A stretch of DNA of 64,000 bases, from the NCBI GenBank assembly GCA_004764695.1, contig SMSO01000035.1, forward strand, positions 3,608,040-3,672,039. Direction: 5' to 3'. The notes under the pieces were generated by a model. That model did not search any database and was not told where the DNA came from. It saw nothing but the letters and a program-made list of their open reading frames with translations. Positions 3 through 42,571 of this stretch are shown piece by piece (the first letter of the stretch is position 1; each line of letters starts with the position of its first letter). This DNA is from Schizochytrium sp. TIO01. Taxonomy: Eukaryota; Protista; Bigyra: Labyrinthulomycetes. The translations under genes were made by a program, and so were the position numbers.

Positions 3-1400
3 TCGGCTACACCGCAGGAGACGCTTGTGGGTCAGCTCGACTTCATTCGTAGTATGTTGAAGAGTGTAGCTTCGGATGCTAAGTATCGTCTCAAGGACCG
101 TGCAGCAGTGGATTCATATGTCCTTCCAGGTCTTTGCTTGACAAAGGGCCTTGACCCATTTCTGCCGCTCTACCAGCATGCTCTCATGAACGGGTCTGCA
201 GAGCAACGCGAAAGTGCTGCTTCTGGTCTGGGCGAGCTAGTTGACCTCACATCTGCAGCTGCGTTGCGTCCTTTTGTCATCAAGATCACTGGTCCGCTCA
301 TCCGTATCGTCGGCGATCGCTTCCCGTGGCAAGTCAAGGTGGCTATCCTTCAGACCTTGAGTAAGCTCTTGGATAAGGGTGGCCCGATGCTCCGCCCCTT
401 CCTGCCCCAGCTTCAAACTACCTTTGTTAAGGCACTTAACAGTGAACAATCTAAGGTGCGCGATAGTGGAACGTCTGCACTCAAGAAGCTCATCAAGATC
501 GGCACTCGTGTGGACCCTCTCGTAAATGATTTGGGCAACACCGCCGTCGCCCCGGATACTGATGCCGGGGTCCGTCTTTCCGTTCTTGAGGCTCTTGCTG
601 GCGTACTGTTAATTTCTGGCTCGAAGGCCACTCAACCGGCCTTGGGCAAGTGCGCAGGCAAATTGGAGTCTGAAGACCTTTTGTTCCACCGCAACGCTGG
701 CATCCGCCAGCAAACTGCTATTTGTTTGGCTCGTGTGCTGAAGCATGTTGAGCAGGGCGACCAAGCCTTCGAGGTCGCCATGCGCAAGCGCATCGACAAC
801 CTCCGCGCTACAACGCCAAACGCAGGTTCATGGATCGAGGCCCACACTGCAATTCTTTTGGCCAGTGCAGCAGCATCGTCGTGCCCAGACCTTCTCTTTG
901 GCACTGCGGATGTAGCCAGTTGGTACAAGAAGATTGTTGATGATTCTTCGTCGTACGGTGCGTCGCTTGATAACGTTTCCCTTCGCGAGGAGTCTTTGAA
1001 TGCTGCTGGTGCTTGGTTGAGTAATGTCAAGCCTGACCAATTCCCCAAGGTCACTGATGCCTTTGTCGAATTCTTGATGACAGGGTGCAAGGATAAGTCT
1101 ACTGAAATGCGTGTGTGCTCGCTTGAGAACCTGAAGCACGCCGCGCGCCGTAACTACGAGGTGATTTCGAAGTATGCGCCCCGTATCTCGTCAGATATTA
1201 TCGCGTATGTCAAAGACTCCAAGCCTCAAGTCCGTGCTGCCGCAGACCAAGTTCTTCTTGCTGTAACGCAAATTCGTACTGACCAGGAGATTCTGAAGGA
1301 TATTATTAAGAACATTTCTTCCTCAGCAACTGGCCGTAATCTCGGTGAGTACTGCCGCAAGACCCTTATTAACGTCGATGAGGATGCTGATGAAGAGTAA
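3..1400 (+). CDS. GCN1: GCN1 translational activator, HEAT-repeat C-terminal part (5' truncated by window edge)
   Basis: Frame is open from base 3 to TAA at 1398-1400. It contains the GCN1 C-terminal signature ALRPFVIKITGPLIRIVGDRFPWQVKVAILQTL..LRPFLPQLQTTFVKAL and RVDPLV, with HEAT-like helical repeats. Confidence 0.92.
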   Translation, partial: SATPQETLVGQLDFIRSMLKSVASDAKYRLKDRAAVDSYVLPGLCLTKGLDPFLPLYQHALMNGSAEQRESAASGLGELVDLTSAAALRPFVIKITGPLIRIVGDRFPWQVKVAILQTLSKLLDKGGPMLRPFLPQLQTTFVKALNSEQSKVRDSGTSALKKLIKIGTRVDPLVNDLGNTAVAPDTDAGVRLSVLEALAGVLLISGSKATQPALGKCAGKLESEDLLFHRNAGIRQQTAICLARVLKHVEQGDQAFEVAMRKRIDNLRATTPNAGSWIEAHTAILLASAAASSCPDLLFGTADVASWYKKIVDDSSSYGASLDNVSLREESLNAAGAWLSNVKPDQFPKVTDAFVEFLMTGCKDKSTEMRVCSLENLKHAARRNYEVISKYAPRISSDIIAYVKDSKPQVRAAADQVLLAVTQIRTDQEILKDIIKNISSSATGRNLGEYCRKTLINVDEDADEE

Positions 1401-1774
1401 AATGGGATTGTTATGTGTATTTGTTCGTTCGAAACCATCTCTCAATCAAAACTCTATTAGTTTCGTAATAGAAATAGAATAAAAAGTGAATTATCAAGAA
1501 ATCAATTCCGTATGATTACTTTAATAGCGTGTATATGCAAGCTTCTTATGTAAACTGCTTACGAGACTTTGAGGCTGGCTGATTTGGTACAGACTTACTT
1601 ACCTTACTTGACCATGCGAGCGCTGAAAGAAAGAGCCAGGAAATAATTTTTATGCATTTATAAGGCGAGAGTTTCATCATGTTTTTTTTAGTTCTGTATT
1701 GTTTTGTACGTACATAAGTGAGACGTGTGTGAGGCCAGTGCAAGAAGTGCGCGCGTGCGGGGGGAGGGGGGCGG

Positions 1775-3706
1775 TTATTTGGTCTTGACAGTTTTGGTCC
1801 AGTTGGATGGGGCAAGGAGAATGAGCTTGCTAGCCTCTTCAAAGGTCATGCGCGACTTCAAAACATCACGGGCAACATCGAGGCATTCACTTGCATTACA
1901 GCAAAGAATTCCAACGACGATATTGTTGCGCAAATAAAAGACTATACCACGTTCGTAAGAGGTTTCACGCGTGGGCTTGCCCATTTCATCTCGCTTTGCA
2001 AGCCAAGTACCCATCGTGGGAAGATTAGAGTTTATTTCGCCCACAGCCTCGAAGGAAAGCTCTACGTTGGGCAGAGCAAATCGGAAAGAAGGTTGGTGTT
2101 TGTACTTACGAAGATTACCATTGGCAGCCACCATATTCTGGCCCGCGAGCAAGCCAGTGTTGAGAGCGTTGTCATAAAGGTCATTGCGACGACGGCGGCT
2201 CAGTGAAACATCATAGTATGATGCCGCACTTCCGGCTACGAAGAGGCCATCAAAAGCTTCTAAAGATGGGTTTACTACAATGCCACCGGTCCGAGGATCA
2301 ACCTCGAGATCACTGATGCGAGCGATGTCAACATCAGGATCTACATTCGTACTAGCAAGGACCACAAGGTCTGCATCGAGGACTTCGCGCTGTGTATTTT
2401 GCAAAAACGTTACACTCACCTTTTCCTGTAGGTCAGGACTCATGAAATCTTCATCTTCATCATCGTTGTTCATGTTGGACGACGCCATGACTGGAATTTC
2501 TGATTCTTCAGATGATACCACTCCGTTGCTAGCCAATGCAGGAGGATGCTCGCTCACCTCTGCACGTGAGACACCCGTCACAAGCACATCAGGCTTGCGT
2601 TCAAGCCCTTGATCTTCAAGGCACTTAGTAAGATGGGCACAAAGATATGCAGGGAAATACTGTTGAAGAGCTGTAGACTCCACGAAGGTCTGAATGATTC
2701 GGTTTGGACGCTCTAGTGATTGGTTGACTTTGAGAAGCGCTGCGGATAAACTTGTACCAAGGTAGCCTCCGCCGACCACCAGAACAGTTTTGCCGCCCTG
2801 AGAGACCATGTTGTATAGGTCATCAAAGTCCTGCAAGTCACGTAGGGTGTTGATGCGATCACGAAGGAGGAACGAAATGCTTGATTTAAGAACATAAAGC
2901 TCACGCGGTTTGCCTGGGGGAGCAACTAGACACTTGTCGTAACCTAGTACACTACCATCTGCAAGCTGGATGGTTTTATCCTCTGCATTGATAAAAATGC
3001 CACCTGGTGCTTCGACAAGCAGAGAAATCGCATGGTGCTTGTCATCCTGTTGCTTTCCTTGCGGGCCACCACCAATAATACTGCCAGAACTTCCACGCGT
3101 CGACCACTTTCTCACATTAGCTCCAATAAGCTCAGTTCGCTCATCGGTGTCAAGCTTGCAGGCGATGTGACGACGCCAGTCGTTGTATACATCGTAGAGT
3201 TCATCAGGAAGCGGATCTTGAAAGGTATCTACATCGATGCGTGGCATTTGGTGTTCTTCCGAAATCAACAAAATTGAGGATTTAGGACGAGACTGGCGAA
3301 TTGCTTCGAGTGCCGTGTAGGCAGCTGTGCCAGATCCAATGATAACATACTCATAGTGCACCTGGCCCACGAGCTTTTTGGGCCGGCTGTTGATCCTGCG
3401 GCGTCTCAAGGTCTCCATAGACGCCTGGGGCTTTGCACTGTCCATTTGGGTGGGCTCATCTGCTGACTTCATCAGCAGAAACGAAGACCCTAAAATTGCT
3501 GTTGCTGCTGTTGCTGCAGCAGCTAGAAAGCGGCTGTTCAAGAGATTCGTCGTGTTTGACGATGAAGAAGACGACTTCGACGAAAATCTGCGCGCAGAGT
3601 GGATGCCATTTCTGTAATCATTTTTTGACGAGTGAATTTCACATGGCACTGAGAATCTGGCAGTTCCGAGCTTTCCCAAGACCCGCTTGCTCATGAGTGC
3701 ACTCAT
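1775..3706 (-). CDS. Mitochondrial apoptosis-inducing factor (AIF/AIFM1)-like flavoprotein, divergent
   Basis: First ATG is at 3706 (MSALMSKRVLG.., an R/S-rich presequence followed by a hydrophobic anchor). FAD motif VIIGSGTAA, NAD motif VLVVGGGYLG, GGIVVN, and AIF C-terminal domain (YKHQP..FEAVGEI..YERGIVFYLRNNIVVGI). The ORF track starts upstream at a non-ATG codon (3808). Confidence 0.82.
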   Translation of the reverse strand: MSALMSKRVLGKLGTARFSVPCEIHSSKNDYRNGIHSARRFSSKSSSSSSNTTNLLNSRFLAAAATAATAILGSSFLLMKSADEPTQMDSAKPQASMETLRRRRINSRPKKLVGQVHYEYVIIGSGTAAYTALEAIRQSRPKSSILLISEEHQMPRIDVDTFQDPLPDELYDVYNDWRRHIACKLDTDERTELIGANVRKWSTRGSSGSIIGGGPQGKQQDDKHHAISLLVEAPGGIFINAEDKTIQLADGSVLGYDKCLVAPPGKPRELYVLKSSISFLLRDRINTLRDLQDFDDLYNMVSQGGKTVLVVGGGYLGTSLSAALLKVNQSLERPNRIIQTFVESTALQQYFPAYLCAHLTKCLEDQGLERKPDVLVTGVSRAEVSEHPPALASNGVVSSEESEIPVMASSNMNNDDEDEDFMSPDLQEKVSVTFLQNTQREVLDADLVVLASTNVDPDVDIARISDLEVDPRTGGIVVNPSLEAFDGLFVAGSAASYYDVSLSRRRRNDLYDNALNTGLLAGQNMVAANGNLRKYKHQPSFRFALPNVELSFEAVGEINSNLPTMGTWLAKRDEMGKPTRETSYERGIVFYLRNNIVVGILCCNASECLDVARDVLKSRMTFEEASKLILLAPSNWTKTVKTK

Positions 3707-36747: not shown

Positions 36748-37661
36748 CCGAAAACGGCGAAAAAGAGACTCACACTGCAAAGCTTTGATATAGGCTTGCT
36801 CCTTTCTTGCGACTGCGATGGAATGTGTGCGGTACAGATAAAAACTAGATTGCCTTCCTCATCATTAGTTTTGTGTTTTCTTGGTTAAATTTTGGGGTGG
36901 CCGTCATGGCGGGGATTATAGAAGGAAACAAGGTTCGAGGGAGACTTTCAGATTTTGATCCACAGCTCATGGCTGTTTCTTATTGTATTCCCTGATTTTG
37001 AGATGCCCTGGTGAGATTCCTACCAATGCTCAAGCTGAAGAAAGGAGAGAGTTTGATTGAGAGCTCTGATCGAAGATTGGGTTCCATAGTTCACTGTGTA
37101 AGATTTGCAATATACATTTTTTTGTTTAACTCACTACTATGATAATCAACTGCTGTAAGAGCGTGTTGACCAATGTGCAACATCATAATTATGATAGTAG
37201 CTTTTGTCTTATTGACATCCATTTATAGCATCTGATATGAGACGAAAGCTCAGTTTAAGCAGCTCCTGATGTTGAAGAATTTGGTCTCCTAAAGGTATCT
37301 CATACAACTAGCTGAACATGATGAACTTCTCAACTAACGCAGCACGCAAATCGACAATGCGATGTGGCACTCTTCGAGTATTATTCAAGCACCCAAAGGA
37401 AGGCAGAAATTATAATTCGAAGAAGGTTTGGAAAATGAAGGGATTGATCAAAAAAGTCTCTTCTAAATATTATATTAAAATATATTTTTTTTTCTTATTT
37501 TTTTTAATGCCTAAATTAAATCCAAAATAGTTAGTCCGTTGAGTCCCAGCTCTTCGCAACATTCGTTCCACAGGTTCATGATAATGTCTTTTCAATCAGA
37601 ATATCAACTCAGAGCAGGCAAGTAGAAGCAACGACGCATAGAGCGTGCATGGTTGACTCTC

Positions 37662-39125
37662 ATGAGAGGCGCGGGCCCAAGCAAGGGCAGGTGGTTTGAG
37701 TACGACGGAGAGCGAGAAAGGTTTGAGGAGCGCGAACTAGCTCAACTCCGAGCTCGAAAGCGCAACCTAACCAAATATGCGACCGCAGAGCTTGAAGAAA
37801 TTGCGAGGGCTCGAGACGAAGAACTTTGTGATCGCCTTCAGAGGCTTGCAGGCAAGCGATGGGGACTTCTGCTGGATTGCGAGGGTCTCGCTTCTGAAAT
37901 TAGAACTCTAGAGAGCGCGATTACGACAAGTTATCATATTGCCAATTCTGGGCCCGCCGCATTAGACAGAGTCACAGGAATAGAACAGCAAGGCCATATC
38001 GCACGAAGTGCATTTATAGAGACAATCTGTCAAAGCGGTATTGTTCACAGAAATGTTGCAAGAGAGGTCTTTGAAGGGTTTGCAGCTATTCAGTACTTAC
38101 GCAAAGGCCTCATCATCTTTGAGCTCGACGATGTTGATGCACGCGAGATTGTAGCAGCTGCACAGTTCTGCCATCCAAAGCCTGTGTCTGCTGCCAAACG
38201 TCTCATAACAGACCTTTTTGATGTCTATGGATCAACACATATTCGCAAGGAGGAGTTCGAAACCTTGCTAACAATTGGGGTGGAATCAATTGACCAGCTT
38301 TGCAAATGCCGTCCCATGGTTGATAGCGCATGGCGCGAATCACCATCACTTGCAGACAGAGTCAAGGGGCGGATCGCACGTGAAGACTTTCGCAAGATTA
38401 TGCATACTACTCTCAAAACATGGTTTGCGCCTTTAGCCCTCAGGTCTGGCTTACAGAGTGAGTGGGAAGGCATGTATCTTCCCAAAAGTCTTGCGGATCT
38501 CCATTACCAATCTCGCCGCGCTAAGAAAGTTGACGATCAATTCAAACGTTTGAGGTGCCATTGGCGACTTGCACGTGCCCATCGATGCTGGAATTTGTGG
38601 CGGGGGTTTGTCTTACGAAGGCGAAAACTACGAAACATCTTCGGGGCTTGTATACATGTCTGGGGCCATCGAACGCAATATCAGGCCTTCGGGGCTTGGG
38701 TAAGGATACTTGTGGCAGACATCATGGCTCAACGCATACAGAATTTCATACGACAAGCCTTATTTCGCATTCGTGCTTATCAGAGGGGCCTTCGGAAGCG
38801 CGCGGCAAGTACTATTCAGAATACTTGGCGAGGTGCCCTTGCACGGCGATGGCTGAGCCAAATGAAGGTACTCCGTGATCATGCAGCACGCACTATACAA
38901 CGCTTTTGGAGAGTACAGAGAGATGCTTATCAAGTCAAGCTGGCTCTCTTCAGGTCTATTAGTGATGGATGGCAAGTTGAGCGAGTTGAAGCCTGCATAA
39001 AGATCCAGTCCACGTTCCGCATGTACCTAGCAAAGTTGCGTGCAATTTCAAGGCGCCAAGCTATAATTGGCCGACGGAAACGTGCCCAGAAAGAAGGTGC
39101 CTTGTATCCGAGACGAGTTAGGTGA
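37662..39125 (+). CDS. IQ calmodulin-binding motif protein (four IQ motifs, possible degenerate EF-hand region)
   Basis: IQNFIRQALFR, IQNTWRGALARR, IQRFWRVQRD, IQSTFRMYLAK. LFDVYGSTHIRKEEFETLL resembles an EF-hand. The start is uncertain (first ATG in the ORF is at 37662). Confidence 0.75.
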   Translation: MRGAGPSKGRWFEYDGERERFEERELAQLRARKRNLTKYATAELEEIARARDEELCDRLQRLAGKRWGLLLDCEGLASEIRTLESAITTSYHIANSGPAALDRVTGIEQQGHIARSAFIETICQSGIVHRNVAREVFEGFAAIQYLRKGLIIFELDDVDAREIVAAAQFCHPKPVSAAKRLITDLFDVYGSTHIRKEEFETLLTIGVESIDQLCKCRPMVDSAWRESPSLADRVKGRIAREDFRKIMHTTLKTWFAPLALRSGLQSEWEGMYLPKSLADLHYQSRRAKKVDDQFKRLRCHWRLARAHRCWNLWRGFVLRRRKLRNIFGACIHVWGHRTQYQAFGAWVRILVADIMAQRIQNFIRQALFRIRAYQRGLRKRAASTIQNTWRGALARRWLSQMKVLRDHAARTIQRFWRVQRDAYQVKLALFRSISDGWQVERVEACIKIQSTFRMYLAKLRAISRRQAIIGRRKRAQKEGALYPRRVR

Positions 39126-40193
39126 CATATTTTCTGCTAGGTAAAATTGGAAGTAGGGTTACTAAAACTTTCGTAATACTAGTGTTCCAACATATTATAG
39201 GGTAAAATATATTTTTATAGGCTTGTATAGGGAATATGTGTAGCAGAAATTTTAGAAGATGTTGCACTAGACAGAAGATTAAGATGCCATAATGAGTTAG
39301 AGGATTGCCACTTTGATGAAAGTGTCACGGTATCATACATGGCCCAACCTACTTGATGGTCATACCCTGTTGCTGAATTATGAGTGGGCTGCACTAATTT
39401 AGACATAGAGAGACAAATGTGTCAAGAGAGAGCCTTGCAGCTTCATCACATTGCAGCTTCATCGCCCATTGATATAAAATAGTCCACTCATCAATGTACG
39501 ATATGTTACCAGAAGAGGTATCGTCGTCACATTATCTCCTTCCGATAGTGAATCGAGCAATCTAGCTGTTTGGTGCGAAGCGCTGGAGACACCACCTACA
39601 ATACAATTATAACGCATCTAAAAAGCTCTCGCCAAAAGTAAAACTATAGTTTCTATCCTCATACTCCCCCTAGCTACTACACCAATGCAATCCGTTGAAC
39701 AAGCACACGGCAAGACTGCAGCAGGCTAAACCTTTTGCTAATACCATCAGTGTTGTTGATGTCATTAGAATAGATCTTTTCGAAGAGATAAGAACCTACG
39801 TCATAGCGAGATGGACATCTGCTTCATAACTTTTGTAGTAGAAACTAAGTAAACACACGTGCATACGCAGGAGACCTCTAGACCAGTAATAATTGCACGA
39901 AGAGGTCTATTGGTCAACATGAGTCGTCTTTCCAAAAAGAAAACAGCAGATAGTGCAGAGACTTTGGGGAATTGCAACCTGCAGAGGGAGTTAAACAAAA
40001 ACGAGAAACAAAAGCATCTAATTGAGGCTGCTGTGTATGCGTTGCAGATTGCAGACGTTTAAATTGACATTGAGGAGCAGAAGCGATTGGTGCAGAAGCG
40101 TAGGGGGGGGACTAAGAATTGATTTTGTCAACTCGTAAACTCATACGGTAGCTGTGGAAATGCGCATTTACACAACAATAGAGAGCTCTAGAC

Positions 40194-40997
40194 CTAGATA
40201 AGGCCTCCAGCGTTGTTGAGCGATGGACTGGAGCCAGACAAAGGTTCAAACTCGGTGTACTTCTTGCTGTTGCCCATTGCTTTATCTTTCGGGTACTTGG
40301 CATCGTTCTTTTGAATTTTCTCCAGGGTGGCGTTGGCCAAGTCAATCCCACAACGGTCAGCTAACCGCGTGACATAGATGAGGATGTCTGCCAGCTCGTC
40401 AGCAACACGAACACGATCCTTATGAGAGAACCCCCCAAGACCAGGTGTTACTCCTTCACGCCACTGGAAGATGGCAGCAAGCTCACCAACCTCGCCAGTA
40501 AGAGCAAGAATTAAATTCCGGGGTGTGTGAAACTGCTCCCAGTTCCGCTCGTCGCTAAACGCCTGAATGCGCTCACGAATGCCTTCAAGTGTGACGCCAC
40601 CAGCAAATGGCGTCGGGGTAAAAGGCTGTGAGGACACAGCTTGCACCATGACCTGCTCCGAAACGGAGTCCTTGTGAGCGCGCATGCGCTTAGCAGCATT
40701 TGTGTTGCGCTTCTTACCCTTGGGTGGACCACGTTTCTTCGAAAAAGAGTAAACACACTCCAAGCCCTTCTTTGCACAACGTTTGCAAGGAGTCTCGCCG
40801 GAGCACTTGACCTTAATCTGTGTGCACATGTCACAAGAGGTTTTACGCACCGAGGTTACCGAATTTCCCACATGTTGCGGCGGCGGCTGGTGGTGATCTG
40901 GTGGCTGTTCATGTGCATAAGGCTGGTTAGGTCCACCCTGACCCTGTACCATGTCTTGCTGCTGGTGGATGCTCATCATCAAATCATTGGTATCCAT
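40194..40997 (-). CDS. Zn(II)2Cys6 binuclear cluster domain fused to dCTP pyrophosphatase 1 (MazG-like) domain
   Basis: Single ORF, ATG at 40997 (267 aa). SCDMCTQIKVKCSGETPCKRCAKKGLECVY is C-x2-C-x6-C-x5-C-x2-C-x6-C. FSDERNWEQFHTPRNLILALTGEVGELAAIFQW..DELADILIY..GIDL..KIQKNDAKYP..KKYT is the DCTPP1 signature. Confidence 0.92.
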   Translation of the reverse strand: MDTNDLMMSIHQQQDMVQGQGGPNQPYAHEQPPDHHQPPPQHVGNSVTSVRKTSCDMCTQIKVKCSGETPCKRCAKKGLECVYSFSKKRGPPKGKKRNTNAAKRMRAHKDSVSEQVMVQAVSSQPFTPTPFAGGVTLEGIRERIQAFSDERNWEQFHTPRNLILALTGEVGELAAIFQWREGVTPGLGGFSHKDRVRVADELADILIYVTRLADRCGIDLANATLEKIQKNDAKYPKDKAMGNSKKYTEFEPLSGSSPSLNNAGGLI

Positions 40998-42571
40998 AGT
41001 TCCCACGTAATTTGCAATCGATTCCGTTGGGAATCGACGTTGTTAATTCGTCTTCACAGCTCTTGCAAATTTATCTAGGTTTCACGAGCTCTTCACGAGT
41101 CCCGGAACTGTAAACTTTTGTTCTCAATCAAATACTGTCTGGACTCCCACAGAGGCCTCGATGCTAAAGCGATACCCACCGAAGCTGGCGAGGAGCAGAG
41201 ATGCGCACAGTGATATCAACTAAGAATCGACAATAAAGGTAGGGGAAAAACAAAGCGACACAGTAGAAAGAAAGAAAGAACAAAAAAGAAAGAAAGAACA
41301 AATCAATGAACGAGTGATTGATGCTTTCCTTTCTTTGCCTATCTGTCTGACTGTCAGTCTCGCTGTCTGAGGTCTGCCAGGCTCTCCCGCTCAGGACTCG
41401 GCAGAAGCTACAGATGGGCGGCTCTCAGCACGCTTCTGGAGGCGGTTGAGGAGTCGGGGTCTTGGGATGGCTTCGCACGGGGTCCAGGCCGCGGCGGAGC
41501 AGAGGACGAGGAGGAGGCGAAAAGGCCTCGTTTCTCCGAATTTGAGGTTTGCCCGAGCGAGAGGAGATCAAAGAGCGTCAGAGAGCGTTAGAGGGGAAGG
41601 GTGGCAAAATATTCTGAGTACGTGCGACTCCCCCTCTCATCCCCACTACCACCTAACCTCCTCACCTTTTGCTCTCTCTTTCCTATAACCCCCCTCATTG
41701 AGCCTTTCTGCCTCCACTGAGAAGACTCTCCCCCCTCAAGCCCTTGATAAAATGTATTATTCAATAGTTTAATGTGCCTTCTCTCTCTGAAGACCACTGC
41801 CTCTCAATTAGTCAGTGGAGGGTCCTCCTATCACTCAACCCATTTCCGCTCTCCCTTTTTCCTGAGCCAGCAGTTTCGCCGGGGGGTAGACACAGTGTTT
41901 GCTTTGAAGATCCCTGGGAAAAAAGGGCAGGTACCATAGGTACCTCCAATACTTATAACCATGGGTCCCTGAAGTTACCCCAAAACAAAAGTGCGGAAAT
42001 CTGACAGTACCCCCAATTAGGGCCTCTTAGAGGTGAGCTGTAAGAGGCGGTCTTCAGGGATCAGTTCCAGAGGTTCTGATGGACCTACCGGTGGTTATGT
42101 TAGGGTCTCTGATGTTTTCGTATTGTTGTTTTACTTATGGAGCAAAGAACTCGAGACTGAGTTTGTCTATTGAGATGGTGAGGAGGACTGGCGTCCTGAG
42201 GACTTAGATGCTAGCCAGAAGAAGCATAAACCAGGCAAATAGAGACCTGAGAACAGGGATTATTCTAGCAGCTGCATGGAAAATCAGCTACTATGTAGGA
42301 AATGCTGAAAGCACGGTTCTTAGTTAGTTCTAGATTGGTTCCGCGGTTAATTTGTGAGAGCAAGATGATTGTGAAGAAGTTTGGGCTTGATCAATGATCG
42401 ACACCGACAGCGTTATCAGAACGTTTCGTGGCTTTGCACCTCACGGCGCACGCTAATAAAGGGTTTATTGTGCTTTGGTCTGGTGTTTTTGCTGGTTACT
42501 TCGTAAACGCTGTGGGTTTGAAACGTAGAGGCGGCAGGGCTTGTACAAAGGGTTAGGCGTCATCTTTGAAG

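What the first reader, a model, noticed from the sequence alone, without database searches (positions are those of the whole stretch)
40194..40997. GAL4-type Zn2Cys6 DNA-binding domain fused to an apparently active dCTP pyrophosphatase (DCTPP1/MazG)
Seen: a 267-aa ORF with no intron needed joins a Q/P/H-rich N-terminus, a complete six-Cys zinc cluster (~40840-40750), a basic NLS-like linker (KKRGPPKGKKR) and a full DCTPP1 domain (~40595-40250). The metal-binding E-x2-E (GEVGE) and E-x2-D (ELAD) residues are retained. Established: Zn2Cys6 domains typically bind CGG triplets as dimers, and DCTPP1 is an oligomeric enzyme that hydrolyses dCTP and 5-substituted dCTPs such as 5-methyl-dCTP. Inference: this is either a one-component transcription factor using MazG as oligomerisation and dNTP-sensing module, or a chromatin-targeted nucleotide-sanitising enzyme, possibly relevant to DNA-virus defence or modified-cytosine control.
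Basis: partly seen in the sequence, partly recalled or inferred. Interest (0 to 1): 0.85.

Follow-up and report, generated by a model that had tools for sequence, protein, structure and literature searches.

The report
Zinc-cluster DNA binder fused to dCTPase
A marine protist (Aurantiochytrium) and its relatives make one small protein that joins a yeast-Gal4-type DNA-binding zinc cluster to an apparently active enzyme that destroys dCTP and modified dCTP, which suggests either a DNA-tethered nucleotide cleaner or a gene regulator built on an enzyme.

Summary
Window 40194-40997 (-) is an intronless 267-aa gene. It has a Q/P/H-rich tail, a perfect CX2CX6CX5CX2CX6C zinc cluster (Pfam Zn_clus, E 1.7e-10), a basic disordered linker, and a full DCTPP1-type MazG domain (E 2.8e-32 to mouse DCTPP1).

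The fusion is real. An MMETSP transcript of Aurantiochytrium limacinum encodes the whole ORF. Contigs from four studies are colinear with the genome. The 543-nt leader contains no AUG.

The same architecture occurs in Hondaea, Mucochytrium and two unnamed relatives, and nowhere else among the proteins within reach of the searches. It is the only DCTPP1 in this 64-Mb genome.

Metal and base-pocket residues are intact in four of the five lineages. The fifth has lost the metal ligands but keeps the zinc cluster. Across lineages the zinc cluster is the best-conserved part of the protein. No coiled coil follows it. A modelled tetramer forms through the MazG domain alone.

My best reading is a bifunctional protein: an active, DNA-bound tetrameric dCTPase that probably also acts as a sequence-specific regulator, with the enzyme replacing the usual dimerisation element. 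Neither DNA binding, nucleotide sensing nor any antiviral role has been tested.

I class it as a new variant of known kinds. I found no description of it in the literature searched.

The parts
40194..40997 (-). Complete coding sequence, 267 aa plus stop; single exon
   Evidence: the identical protein P0079 and the MMETSP transcript protein P0001 (1 aa different)
40848..40997 (-). Residues 1-50: Q/P/H-rich, low-complexity, predicted disordered N-terminus (possibly an activation-type region)
   Evidence: Composition; pLDDT 37-52; the N-termini are 11-24% Q in all six fusion sequences scored, low-complexity in most, and not conserved in sequence
40731..40841 (-). Residues 53-89: Zn2Cys6 binuclear cluster (Cys 55, 58, 65, 71, 74, 81). 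K62 sits at the position of Gal4 Lys18.
   Evidence: Pfam; GAL4 and LAC9 solved structures; spacing; pLDDT 79-91; 67-98% identical among the fusions
40611..40739 (-). Residues 87-129: basic KKRGPPKGKKR...KRMR stretch followed by a flexible linker, with no coiled coil. The KRGP.K tail is shared with other zinc-cluster genes of this genome.
   Evidence: (pLDDT about 50-60, no helix between 77 and 136)
40245..40625 (-). Residues 125-251: DCTPP1-type all-alpha MazG NTP pyrophosphohydrolase domain. Metal ligands are E169, E172, E201 and D204. The base pocket is F147, W153, F156, H157, W179, I207, Y208 and Y235.
   Evidence: pLDDT 96-98; tetramer interface at residues 126-237
40197..40244 (-). Residues 252-267: poorly conserved, disordered C-terminal tail
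40998..41540 (-). 5' leader as defined by contigs (ends at 41398-41538 in four studies). It contains no ATG, so M1 is the first AUG.
39200..40193 (-). About 1 kb downstream that lies on the same contigs. Three studies end within 5 nt of 39200. It is a likely long 3' UTR and holds no ORF of 66 aa or more.

Best explanation
This is a genuine, transcribed gene fusion specific to thraustochytrids. It encodes a bifunctional protein. SHOWN: one intronless mRNA encodes a Q-rich disordered tail, a canonical Zn2Cys6 cluster with its basic tail, a flexible linker of about 40 residues, and a DCTPP1 domain that keeps every metal ligand and all but one (His38) of the base-pocket residues listed for human DCTPP1. 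It is the only DCTPP1 gene in the genome. The architecture is conserved in at least five lineages. INFERRED: the MazG domain forms the usual DCTPP1 tetramer and hydrolyses dCTP and 5-modified dCTP. The tetramer takes the place of the coiled coil that normally dimerises Gal4-type factors, so two to four zinc clusters are presented on flexible tethers to CGG-type half-sites. The protein is therefore nuclear and bound to DNA, and most likely also works as a sequence-specific regulator, a 'trigger enzyme'. Whether nucleotide occupancy changes DNA binding or activation is not known.
For: The fusion is real. A complete MMETSP transcript ORF exists, as does an identical Logan protein. Contigs from 4 studies are colinear across both domains and show no joints. 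The 543-nt leader has no ATG. The architecture is conserved: Hondaea GBG28001.1, Mucochytrium quahogii, P0089/P0227 and P0115 all carry Zn_clus plus a MazG domain. Their MazG domains fall on one side of a branch in the tree (support 76). The enzyme half looks active. The match to mouse DCTPP1 has E 2.8e-32. F41, W47, F50, H51, E63, E66, W73, E95, D98, I101, Y102 and Y129 (human numbering, roles from PMC13291643) are kept in 4 of 5 lineages, with I101 reading Leu in Mucochytrium. It is the only PF12643 hit in the 64-Mb genome, and the only other MazG-superfamily hit is HisIE. The DNA-binding half is constrained. The Zn cluster plus basic region is 98/85/67/69% identical to the window protein, against 84/52/50/37% for MazG. 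P0115 has lost H51, E63, E66, D98, Y102 and Y129 and sits on a 6-fold long branch, yet keeps the cluster intact. K62 occupies the place of Gal4 Lys18, the only side chain of Gal4 that contacts bases (PMC6265462). The cluster belongs to the genome's own zinc-cluster family, which sits in 450-1200-aa open frames. The layout resembles a transcription factor. All N-termini are Q-rich. No helix lies between the cluster and MazG. The four-copy model scores ipSAE 0.92 against a best control of 0.21, its interface is confined to residues 126-237, runs agree in at least 48% of contacts, and partner pLDDT is at least 66. That mark was reached by 21 of 30 proteins solved as pairs and 0 of 23 solved as single chains, but this pass may come from memory of solved DCTPP1 tetramers.
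Against: Nothing here tests DNA binding, target genes or enzyme activity. His38, one of the two proposed cytosine-selectivity histidines of mammalian DCTPP1, is Ile here. It is also not kept in any of the seven non-vertebrate DCTPP1 homologues aligned here or in the other fusions, so substrate preference may differ. There is no fungal middle-homology domain or other recognised regulatory domain. The 1.57-kb upstream region shows no excess of CGG..CCG pairs, 1 against 5.9 expected, so there is no hint of autoregulation through a classical site. The organism of P0115 is unknown, so it may be a paralogue living beside an active copy. A Q-rich tail is weak evidence for activation. The tetramer model was made without an alignment, and the calibration of the test was for two copies.
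Confidence: 0.5

Rival explanations
1. A DNA-tethered sanitising enzyme only. The zinc cluster and basic tail serve as a nuclear import and chromatin or DNA anchor that concentrates an active dCTPase where DNA is made or repaired. This would keep 5-methyl-dCTP and other modified dCTPs out of DNA. The protein would have no role in transcription.
For: It is the sole DCTPP1 of the genome and its catalytic residues are intact. Mammalian DCTPP1 is found in the nucleus as well as the cytoplasm, which has been taken to fit its house-cleaning role (PMC4491611). The genome has two C5-DNA-methylase homologues, so 5-methyl-dCMP could arise from DNA turnover. There is no recognised activation or regulatory domain beyond low-complexity sequence.
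Against: A simple basic NLS would be enough for nuclear import, and substrates are small and diffuse freely, so tethering gains little. The cluster is more conserved than the enzyme domain, which points to a specific conserved target. P0115 keeps the cluster after losing the metal ligands, which makes no sense for a pure enzyme anchor unless P0115 is decaying.
Confidence: 0.28
2. Primarily a nucleotide-responsive transcription factor. The DCTPP1 domain would act as the ligand-sensing and oligomerisation module, with slow hydrolysis or none that matters physiologically. Binding of dCTP, modified dCTP or dCMP would switch DNA binding or activation of genes for pyrimidine or dNTP metabolism. That would be a eukaryotic counterpart of NrdR or of Ppr1 logic.
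For: P0115 keeps the two stacking tryptophans, F50 and E95 but has lost the metal ligands E63, E66 and D98. That pattern is expected of a binder that no longer hydrolyses. The zinc cluster is the best-conserved module. The tails are Q-rich. There is a precedent for a Zn2Cys6 activator built on an NTPase-like fold, Bhr1 (PMC13532241, abstract).
Against: Four of five lineages keep the complete catalytic set, and no other DCTPP1 is present to do the enzymatic job in this genome. There is no evidence that ligand state reaches the DNA-binding domain across a disordered 40-residue linker. No target genes are known.
Confidence: 0.15
3. Artefact: an assembly chimera, a mis-joined gene model, or two genes translated separately.
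For: An in-frame Met117 lies just before the MazG domain and could in principle start a DCTPP1 of ordinary size. Contigs cannot show internal transcript starts.
Against: The ORF is continuous, with a stop 15 codons upstream of M1. Independent transcriptome assemblies of three species give the same fused ORF. Contigs of four studies span both domains. The leader has no upstream AUG. An annotated genome of another genus, Hondaea, has the same fusion.
Confidence: 0.02

Closest known systems
Mammalian DCTPP1 (RS21-C6 / XTP3TPA), PDB 2a3q, 2oig, 6sqw, 7mu5
   Same: Residues 125-251 align end to end with mouse DCTPP1 19-145 (E 2.8e-32). The E-x2-E and E-x2-D metal ligands are kept, as are the Trp47/Trp73 sandwich, Phe50, His51, Tyr102 and Tyr129. 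A tetramer is modelled through this domain.
   Different: It carries about 125 extra N-terminal residues holding a DNA-binding zinc cluster. His38 is Ile. It has a short, unrelated C-tail. Stand-alone DCTPP1 proteins are about 150-170 aa and have no DNA-binding domain.
Gal4-type Zn2Cys6 transcription factors (Gal4, Ppr1, Put3, Leu3, Hap1)
   Same: It has the canonical six-Cys spacing, a Lys at the Gal4 Lys18 position and a basic tail after the sixth Cys. It matches the solved GAL4 and LAC9 DNA-binding domains.
   Different: There is no coiled-coil dimerisation helix after the linker and no fungal middle-homology region. The whole protein is only 267 aa, and an enzyme tetramer sits where the dimerisation and regulatory parts would be. 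Ppr1 senses pyrimidine-pathway intermediates but is not itself an enzyme (my own knowledge).
Pho7 and AlcR (monomeric Zn2Cys6 DNA binders)
   Same: They also lack a coiled coil after the cluster (PMC6265462).
   Different: They bind as monomers through extended contacts. Here the attached domain is expected to make the protein multivalent.
[quoted passage not shown]
   Same: It is a Zn2Cys6 DNA-binding domain combined with a nucleotide-binding, enzyme-type fold in one transcriptional activator (PMC13532241, abstract).
   Different: It is a fungal protein with a different nucleotide-binding fold, and its function as an activator has been shown. No sequence relationship to the MazG half was tested here.
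Bacterial enzyme-regulator fusions and nucleotide-sensing repressors (PutA, BirA, NadR, NrdR)
   Same: The logic is the same: a DNA-binding module joined to an enzyme or nucleotide-binding module of the pathway being controlled (my own knowledge, not tested here).
   Different: The folds are unrelated and the proteins are prokaryotic. They are analogies only.

Membership tests
Zn2Cys6 binuclear cluster DNA-binding domain (Pfam PF00172, Gal4 type) | Six cysteines spaced CX2CX6CX5-12CX2CX6-8C | tested here: met
   C55, C58, C65, C71, C74 and C81 are spaced CX2CX6CX5CX2CX6C. All six are invariant in all five fusion lineages.
Zn2Cys6 binuclear cluster DNA-binding domain (Pfam PF00172, Gal4 type) | Profile score above the curated threshold, and similarity to solved DNA-binding domains | tested here: met
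   41.2 bits against a cut-off of 21. GAL4 1d66 matches with E 6.2e-5 and LAC9 1cld with E 9e-4.
Zn2Cys6 binuclear cluster DNA-binding domain (Pfam PF00172, Gal4 type) | Base-contacting lysine (Gal4 Lys18), the fourth residue after the second Cys | tested here: met
   K62 is the fourth residue after C58 and is invariant in the five fusions. The role of Lys18 is taken from PMC6265462.
Canonical Gal4-type transcription factor (whole-protein architecture) | Coiled-coil dimerisation helix shortly after the cluster | tested here: not met
   The AlphaFold2 model has no helix between residues 77 and 136, and the linker has pLDDT of about 50-60.
Canonical Gal4-type transcription factor (whole-protein architecture) | Fungal-specific middle-homology / regulatory domain (Fungal_trans) | tested here: not met
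   The Pfam scan finds only Zn_clus and MazG families.
Canonical Gal4-type transcription factor (whole-protein architecture) | Sequence-specific DNA binding and transcriptional effect | not testable with these tools
   This needs EMSA, DAP-seq, ChIP or mutants.
DCTPP1 / MazG-like all-alpha NTP pyrophosphohydrolase (PF12643) | Profile score above threshold, and full-length homology to solved DCTPP1 | tested here: met
   49.2 bits against a cut-off of 27. Mouse DCTPP1 residues 19-145 align with query 125-251, E 2.8e-32.
DCTPP1 / MazG-like all-alpha NTP pyrophosphohydrolase (PF12643) | Mg-binding E-x2-E and E-x2-D (human E63, E66, E95, D98) | tested here: met
   E169, E172, E201 and D204 are present here and in Hondaea, Mucochytrium and P0089. 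They are lost in P0115 (K, A, E, N).
DCTPP1 / MazG-like all-alpha NTP pyrophosphohydrolase (PF12643) | Cytosine pocket: Trp47/Trp73 sandwich, Phe41, Phe50, Ile101, Tyr102, Tyr129, His51 | tested here: met
   F147, W153, F156, H157, W179, I207, Y208 and Y235 are present. Residue roles are from PMC13291643.
DCTPP1 / MazG-like all-alpha NTP pyrophosphohydrolase (PF12643) | His38 selectivity filter of mammalian DCTPP1 | tested here: not met
   It is I144 here and V, T, L or F in the other fusions. It is also absent from the invertebrate and algal homologues aligned, so it seems to be a narrower, mammalian feature.
DCTPP1 / MazG-like all-alpha NTP pyrophosphohydrolase (PF12643) | Homotetramer with active sites shared between subunits | tested here: inconclusive
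   The four-copy model scores ipSAE 0.92 against a best control of 0.21, with its interface at residues 126-237. The pass may reflect memory of solved DCTPP1 tetramers and is not a measurement.
DCTPP1 / MazG-like all-alpha NTP pyrophosphohydrolase (PF12643) | Hydrolysis of dCTP and 5-substituted dCTP to dCMP and PPi | not testable with these tools
   This needs an enzyme assay.

The most novel reading that the evidence does not exclude
A eukaryotic one-component nucleotide sensor. The DCTPP1 tetramer would read the level of dCTP or of modified dCTP (for example 5-methyl-dCTP released by DNA turnover). Through the attached Zn2Cys6 clusters it would switch transcription of pyrimidine, dNTP or DNA-modification genes. 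The enzyme's own hydrolysis would reset the signal. The catalytically dead relative P0115 would be a pure sensor form. This would be a eukaryotic functional counterpart of bacterial NrdR, built from unrelated parts.
Probability: 0.15. Interest if true: 0.85.

Novelty: new variant of a known kind. Interest (0 to 1): 0.6.

Why it matters
DCTPP1 is known only as a free, soluble house-cleaning enzyme, and Zn2Cys6 factors are known mainly as fungal regulators that dimerise through a coiled coil. Here a whole protist lineage has replaced its only DCTPP1 with a version permanently joined to a sequence-specific DNA-binding domain, and that domain is the most conserved part of the protein.

If the protein regulates genes, it would be a rare eukaryotic case of a metabolic enzyme acting directly as a transcription factor. 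It would also offer a compact 267-aa, intronless model for asking how nucleotide-pool quality is reported to the nucleus. If it is only tethered, that would imply that removal of modified dCTP is spatially organised on DNA.

Both readings can be tested in Aurantiochytrium, which is cultivable and of industrial interest. The public annotation of the Hondaea orthologue, 'dCTP pyrophosphatase 1', misses the DNA-binding half.

Tried and rejected
Stand-alone DCTPP1 in the same genome: none. PF12643 hits only the fusion. The one other MazG-superfamily hit (C30, L003) is a HisIE-type histidine-biosynthesis protein.

The same architecture outside labyrinthulomycete-like sequences: not found.
- The whole-protein word-index search, the zinc-cluster-region search and the profile of the five fusions gave only five clusters.
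- The full HMMER scan of 1.84 billion representatives added no others among its best 150. Weaker or much longer fusions could still be hidden below rank 150.
- The metagenome scan returned only ordinary zinc-cluster genes. L010, the longest match, is a 477-aa zinc-cluster protein with no MazG-like motif visible in its translation; it was not scanned against Pfam.
- The ESM Atlas gave no usable hit.

Autoregulatory CGG..CCG sites upstream: not enriched, 1 against 5.9 expected.

Functional hints from neighbouring genes: none. The neighbours are an IQ-motif protein, a weak Yippee/Mis18-like protein, radial spoke protein 3 and a Mut7-type exonuclease.

Literature: no paper in the library holds 'dCTP pyrophosphatase' together with Zn2Cys6, Aurantiochytrium or Schizochytrium. 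None of the ten best-ranked papers of the MazG / zinc-cluster search contained MazG.

Transcription evidence from reads: the runs found are kept as contigs and are labelled RNA only by guess. They show colinearity and consistent ends, but not expression level, strand or internal starts. The firm transcript evidence is the MMETSP entry.

Full report
**What is there**

On the minus strand an open frame runs from 41006/40997 to 40194. From the ATG at 40997 it encodes 267 residues.

Pfam finds two domains above their curated cut-offs:
- Zn_clus (PF00172) at residues 53-89, E 1.7e-10.
- MazG-like (PF12643) at residues 170-249, E 6.5e-13, with a weaker overlapping MazG (PF03819) match.

Against solved structures, residues 125-251 align end to end with mouse DCTPP1/RS21-C6 residues 19-145 (E 2.8e-32). 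Residues 52-92 align with the GAL4 and LAC9 DNA-binding domains (E 6e-5 to 9e-4).

The six cysteines (55, 58, 65, 71, 74, 81) have the textbook spacing CX2CX6CX5CX2CX6C.

**Whose genome, and is the fusion real?**

The protein is identical to a Logan-derived protein (P0079). It differs by one residue (A107T) from a complete ORF in MMETSP0958, which to my knowledge is the transcriptome sample of Aurantiochytrium limacinum. The next best hit is from Hondaea fermentalgiana, so the window is from a thraustochytrid. The assembly is 64 Mb in 37 contigs.

Contigs from four independent studies were laid on 39400-41900. The runs are small and transcriptome-sized, but they are labelled RNA only by guess. 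Each contig is one colinear piece across the whole gene with no joints. Their upstream ends scatter over 41398-41538, and three of them end downstream within 5 nt of about 39200.

The 543 nt between 41540 and the start codon hold no ATG at all, so M1 is the first AUG of that transcript. The frame is closed 15 codons upstream of M1 (open frame 282 aa).

An assembly chimera or a mis-joined model is therefore very unlikely. What contigs cannot exclude is a second, internal start. An in-frame Met117 lies just before the enzyme domain.

**Distribution**

The same architecture appears in five protein clusters:
- A. limacinum.
- Hondaea fermentalgiana (GBG28001.1, annotated only as 'dCTP pyrophosphatase 1', 71-74% identical).
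- Mucochytrium quahogii (MMETSP0099 and EukProt, about 50% identical).
- An unnamed MMETSP/JGI protein (P0089/P0227).
- An unnamed JGI protein on a 187-kb contig (P0115).

Three further searches found no other fusion:
- A profile of these five, searched against 5.8 billion proteins of 147-467 aa.
- A search with the zinc-cluster region alone.
- The best 150 hits of a full HMMER scan of 1.84 billion representatives.

In a tree of 77 MazG domains the five fusions lie on one side of a branch. Support is weak (SH-aLRT 76), and one unfused 143-aa protein, P0108, is unresolved beside them. This is compatible with a single fusion event.

The zinc cluster itself resembles the genome's other zinc clusters. 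There are about nine others, in open frames of 450-1200 aa. Several share the run CDxCTxxKVKCSG..PC.RC..KGI.C.Y, followed by a basic stretch containing KRGP. The DNA-binding module was therefore probably borrowed from a resident transcription-factor family, and the 'NLS-like' basic tail is a feature of that family's DNA-binding domain.

**Is the enzyme half alive?**

Residue roles are taken from the human DCTPP1 inhibitor structures (PMC13291643). In human numbering the window protein keeps:
- the metal ligands E63, E66, E95 and D98;
- the Trp47/Trp73 sandwich;
- F41, F50, H51, I101, Y102 and Y129.

In window numbering these are E169, E172, E201, D204, W153, W179, F147, F156, H157, I207, Y208 and Y235. 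Hondaea and P0089 keep all of them, and Mucochytrium keeps all but I101, which is Leu there.

The one exception is His38, which is Ile here. It is not conserved in the invertebrate and algal homologues aligned either, so I read it as a narrower mammalian feature. Substrate preference may still differ.

The genome has no other DCTPP1. PF12643 hits only this gene, and the only other MazG-superfamily hit is a HisIE-type histidine-biosynthesis protein. Hondaea's annotated proteome likewise contributed only the fused form to the hit lists, though that search is word-indexed and could miss a copy. So in these organisms the house-cleaning job, if it is done at all, is done by the fused protein.

**Is the DNA-binding half under selection?**

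Yes, and more strongly than the enzyme half. Identity to the window protein, in the order Hondaea / Mucochytrium / P0089 / P0115:
- Residues 50-95 (cluster plus basic tail): 98 / 85 / 67 / 69%.
- MazG domain: 84 / 52 / 50 / 37%.
- N-terminal tail and linker: far lower.

K62 sits four residues after the second Cys. That is the position of Gal4 Lys18, the only Gal4 side chain that contacts bases (PMC6265462). K62 is invariant in the five fusions.

P0115 is the most telling case. It has H51Q, E63K, E66A, D98N, Y102H and Y129R, and an end branch of 2.52 against a median of 0.39. It still keeps an intact cluster, the KKRGPPK tail, both stacking tryptophans and a Q/S-rich N-terminus. Whatever the cluster does, it persists where catalysis has been given up.

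**Shape**

The AlphaFold2 model (80-sequence alignment, mean pLDDT 76) shows two folded modules joined by floppy segments:
- The cluster, residues 51-88, pLDDT 79-91.
- The four-helix MazG domain, residues 130-240, pLDDT 96-98.
- The N-terminus, the linker at 89-125 and the C-tail, at pLDDT about 40-60.

No helix follows the cluster, so the coiled coil that dimerises Gal4, Ppr1, Put3 and others (PMC6265462) is missing.

Four copies of residues 45-267 were modelled together:
- The score was ipSAE 0.92 in three runs, against 0.21 for the best of three controls.
- The confident interface lies entirely within residues 126-237.
- Runs agree in at least 48% of contacts, and partner pLDDT is at least 66.
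- The mark was reached by 21 of 30 proteins solved as pairs and by 0 of 23 solved as single chains.
- The tool warns that this job differs from its calibration, which used two copies, and that a pass for a family with solved tetramers may come from memory.

Human DCTPP1 is a tetramer (PMC13291643, Fig. 1 legend). I take this as showing likeness to the DCTPP1 tetramer, not as proof.

**How it most likely works**

The steps that are shown:
- One mRNA encodes one polypeptide with two intact domains.
- It is the sole DCTPP1 of the genome.
- The architecture is conserved, and the DNA-binding module is the most constrained part.

The steps that are inferred:
- The MazG domain tetramerises and hydrolyses dCTP and 5-modified dCTP.
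- The tetramer replaces the missing coiled coil, so that two to four clusters on tethers of about 40 residues can engage repeated CGG-type half-sites.
- The protein is nuclear and bound to DNA.
- Given the Q-rich tail and the survival of the cluster in a catalytically dead relative, it also acts as a sequence-specific regulator.

My estimates:
- Bifunctional 'trigger enzyme': about 0.5.
- Pure DNA or chromatin anchor for the enzyme: about 0.28.
- Primarily a nucleotide-sensing factor: about 0.15.
- Artefact: about 0.02.

The upstream intergenic region shows no excess of CGG..CCG pairs, and the neighbouring genes are unrelated in function, so I have no candidate targets. The genome does carry two C5-DNA-methylase homologues, so 5-methylated deoxycytidine nucleotides are at least plausible substrates there.

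**Comparison with what is known**

As an enzyme domain it passes the sequence tests for DCTPP1 except His38. As a DNA-binding domain it passes every sequence test for a Zn2Cys6 cluster. As a whole protein it is not a canonical Gal4-type factor, because it has no coiled coil and no middle-homology region.

The closest conceptual relatives are:
- Pho7 and AlcR, clusters without a coiled coil that bind as monomers (PMC6265462).
- Bhr1, a fungal activator that joins Zn2Cys6 to a septin-like NTPase fold (PMC13532241, abstract).
- By analogy only, bacterial PutA, BirA, NadR and NrdR (my own knowledge).

I found no paper in the searchable library that mentions this fusion. The one named public annotation calls it simply dCTP pyrophosphatase 1.

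**Verdict**

The gene is real, expressed and conserved in a protist lineage. The architecture is a new variant that combines two well-known kinds. Its mechanism is open but directly testable. Interest is 0.6.

**Limits**
- The reads tool offered only contigs from runs whose RNA label is a guess.
- The organisms of two of the five fusion clusters are unknown.

Noticed in passing
window 40998-41540 (-): The 543-nt leader upstream of the start codon contains no ATG at all. It includes a low-complexity TTTC-rich stretch (41262-41313) and a direct repeat CTCGTGAA..CTCGTGAA near 41075-41100.
   Followed up: partly
window 39200-40193 (-): Contigs from three independent studies run about 1 kb past the stop codon and end within 5 nt of each other near 39200. 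That is only about 75 nt from the stop of the convergent IQ-motif gene (37653-39125, +). It may be a long 3' UTR or an unrecognised short unit. It holds no ORF of 66 aa or more.
   Followed up: partly
window 40647-40649 (codon of Met117, -): An in-frame Met lies just before the MazG domain and could give an untethered DCTPP1 of about 150 aa. A Met also lies in the corresponding linker of Hondaea, but not in P0089.
   Followed up: no
P0115 (unnamed JGI protein, 324 aa): This relative has an intact zinc cluster, but its MazG domain has lost H51, E63, E66, D98, Y102 and Y129 while keeping both stacking tryptophans. It is a likely pseudoenzyme form of the fusion.
   Followed up: partly
G000:C13:2183328-2184464 (+) and G000:C6:55828-57102 (-): Two C5-cytosine DNA-methylase (PF00145) homologues sit in open frames of 442 and 499 aa. 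Whether they act on DNA or on tRNA (DNMT2 type) was not examined.
   Followed up: no
L003 = G000:C30:1435578-1438736, ORF 1357-2895 (-): This is a 512-aa HisIE-type protein (phosphoribosyl-AMP cyclohydrolase plus a phosphoribosyl-ATP pyrophosphatase end). It is the only other MazG-superfamily hit in the genome.
   Followed up: partly
L020, L023 (G000:C13:2391409-2391846; C30:7909394-7909831): These resident zinc-cluster genes, in open frames of about 640 aa, have clusters and KRGP basic tails that closely resemble those of the fusion. They are a likely source family for the DNA-binding module. The genome has only about ten Zn_clus hits in all.
   Followed up: partly
P0003, P0087, P0088, P0086 (Fibrocapsa), P0024: Other unusual DCTPP1 architectures occur in protist and metagenome proteins. 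There are tandem double MazG-like domains, and one methyltransferase plus MazG-like fusion (P0024, 438 aa).
   Followed up: no
window 39400-41540: The public runs differ from the window at about 0.5% of positions and share the same variants across studies, for example 40665 G>A and 40763 A>G. 40679 C>T gives A107T, as in the MMETSP protein. These are strain or allele differences.
   Followed up: partly
   Followed up: partly
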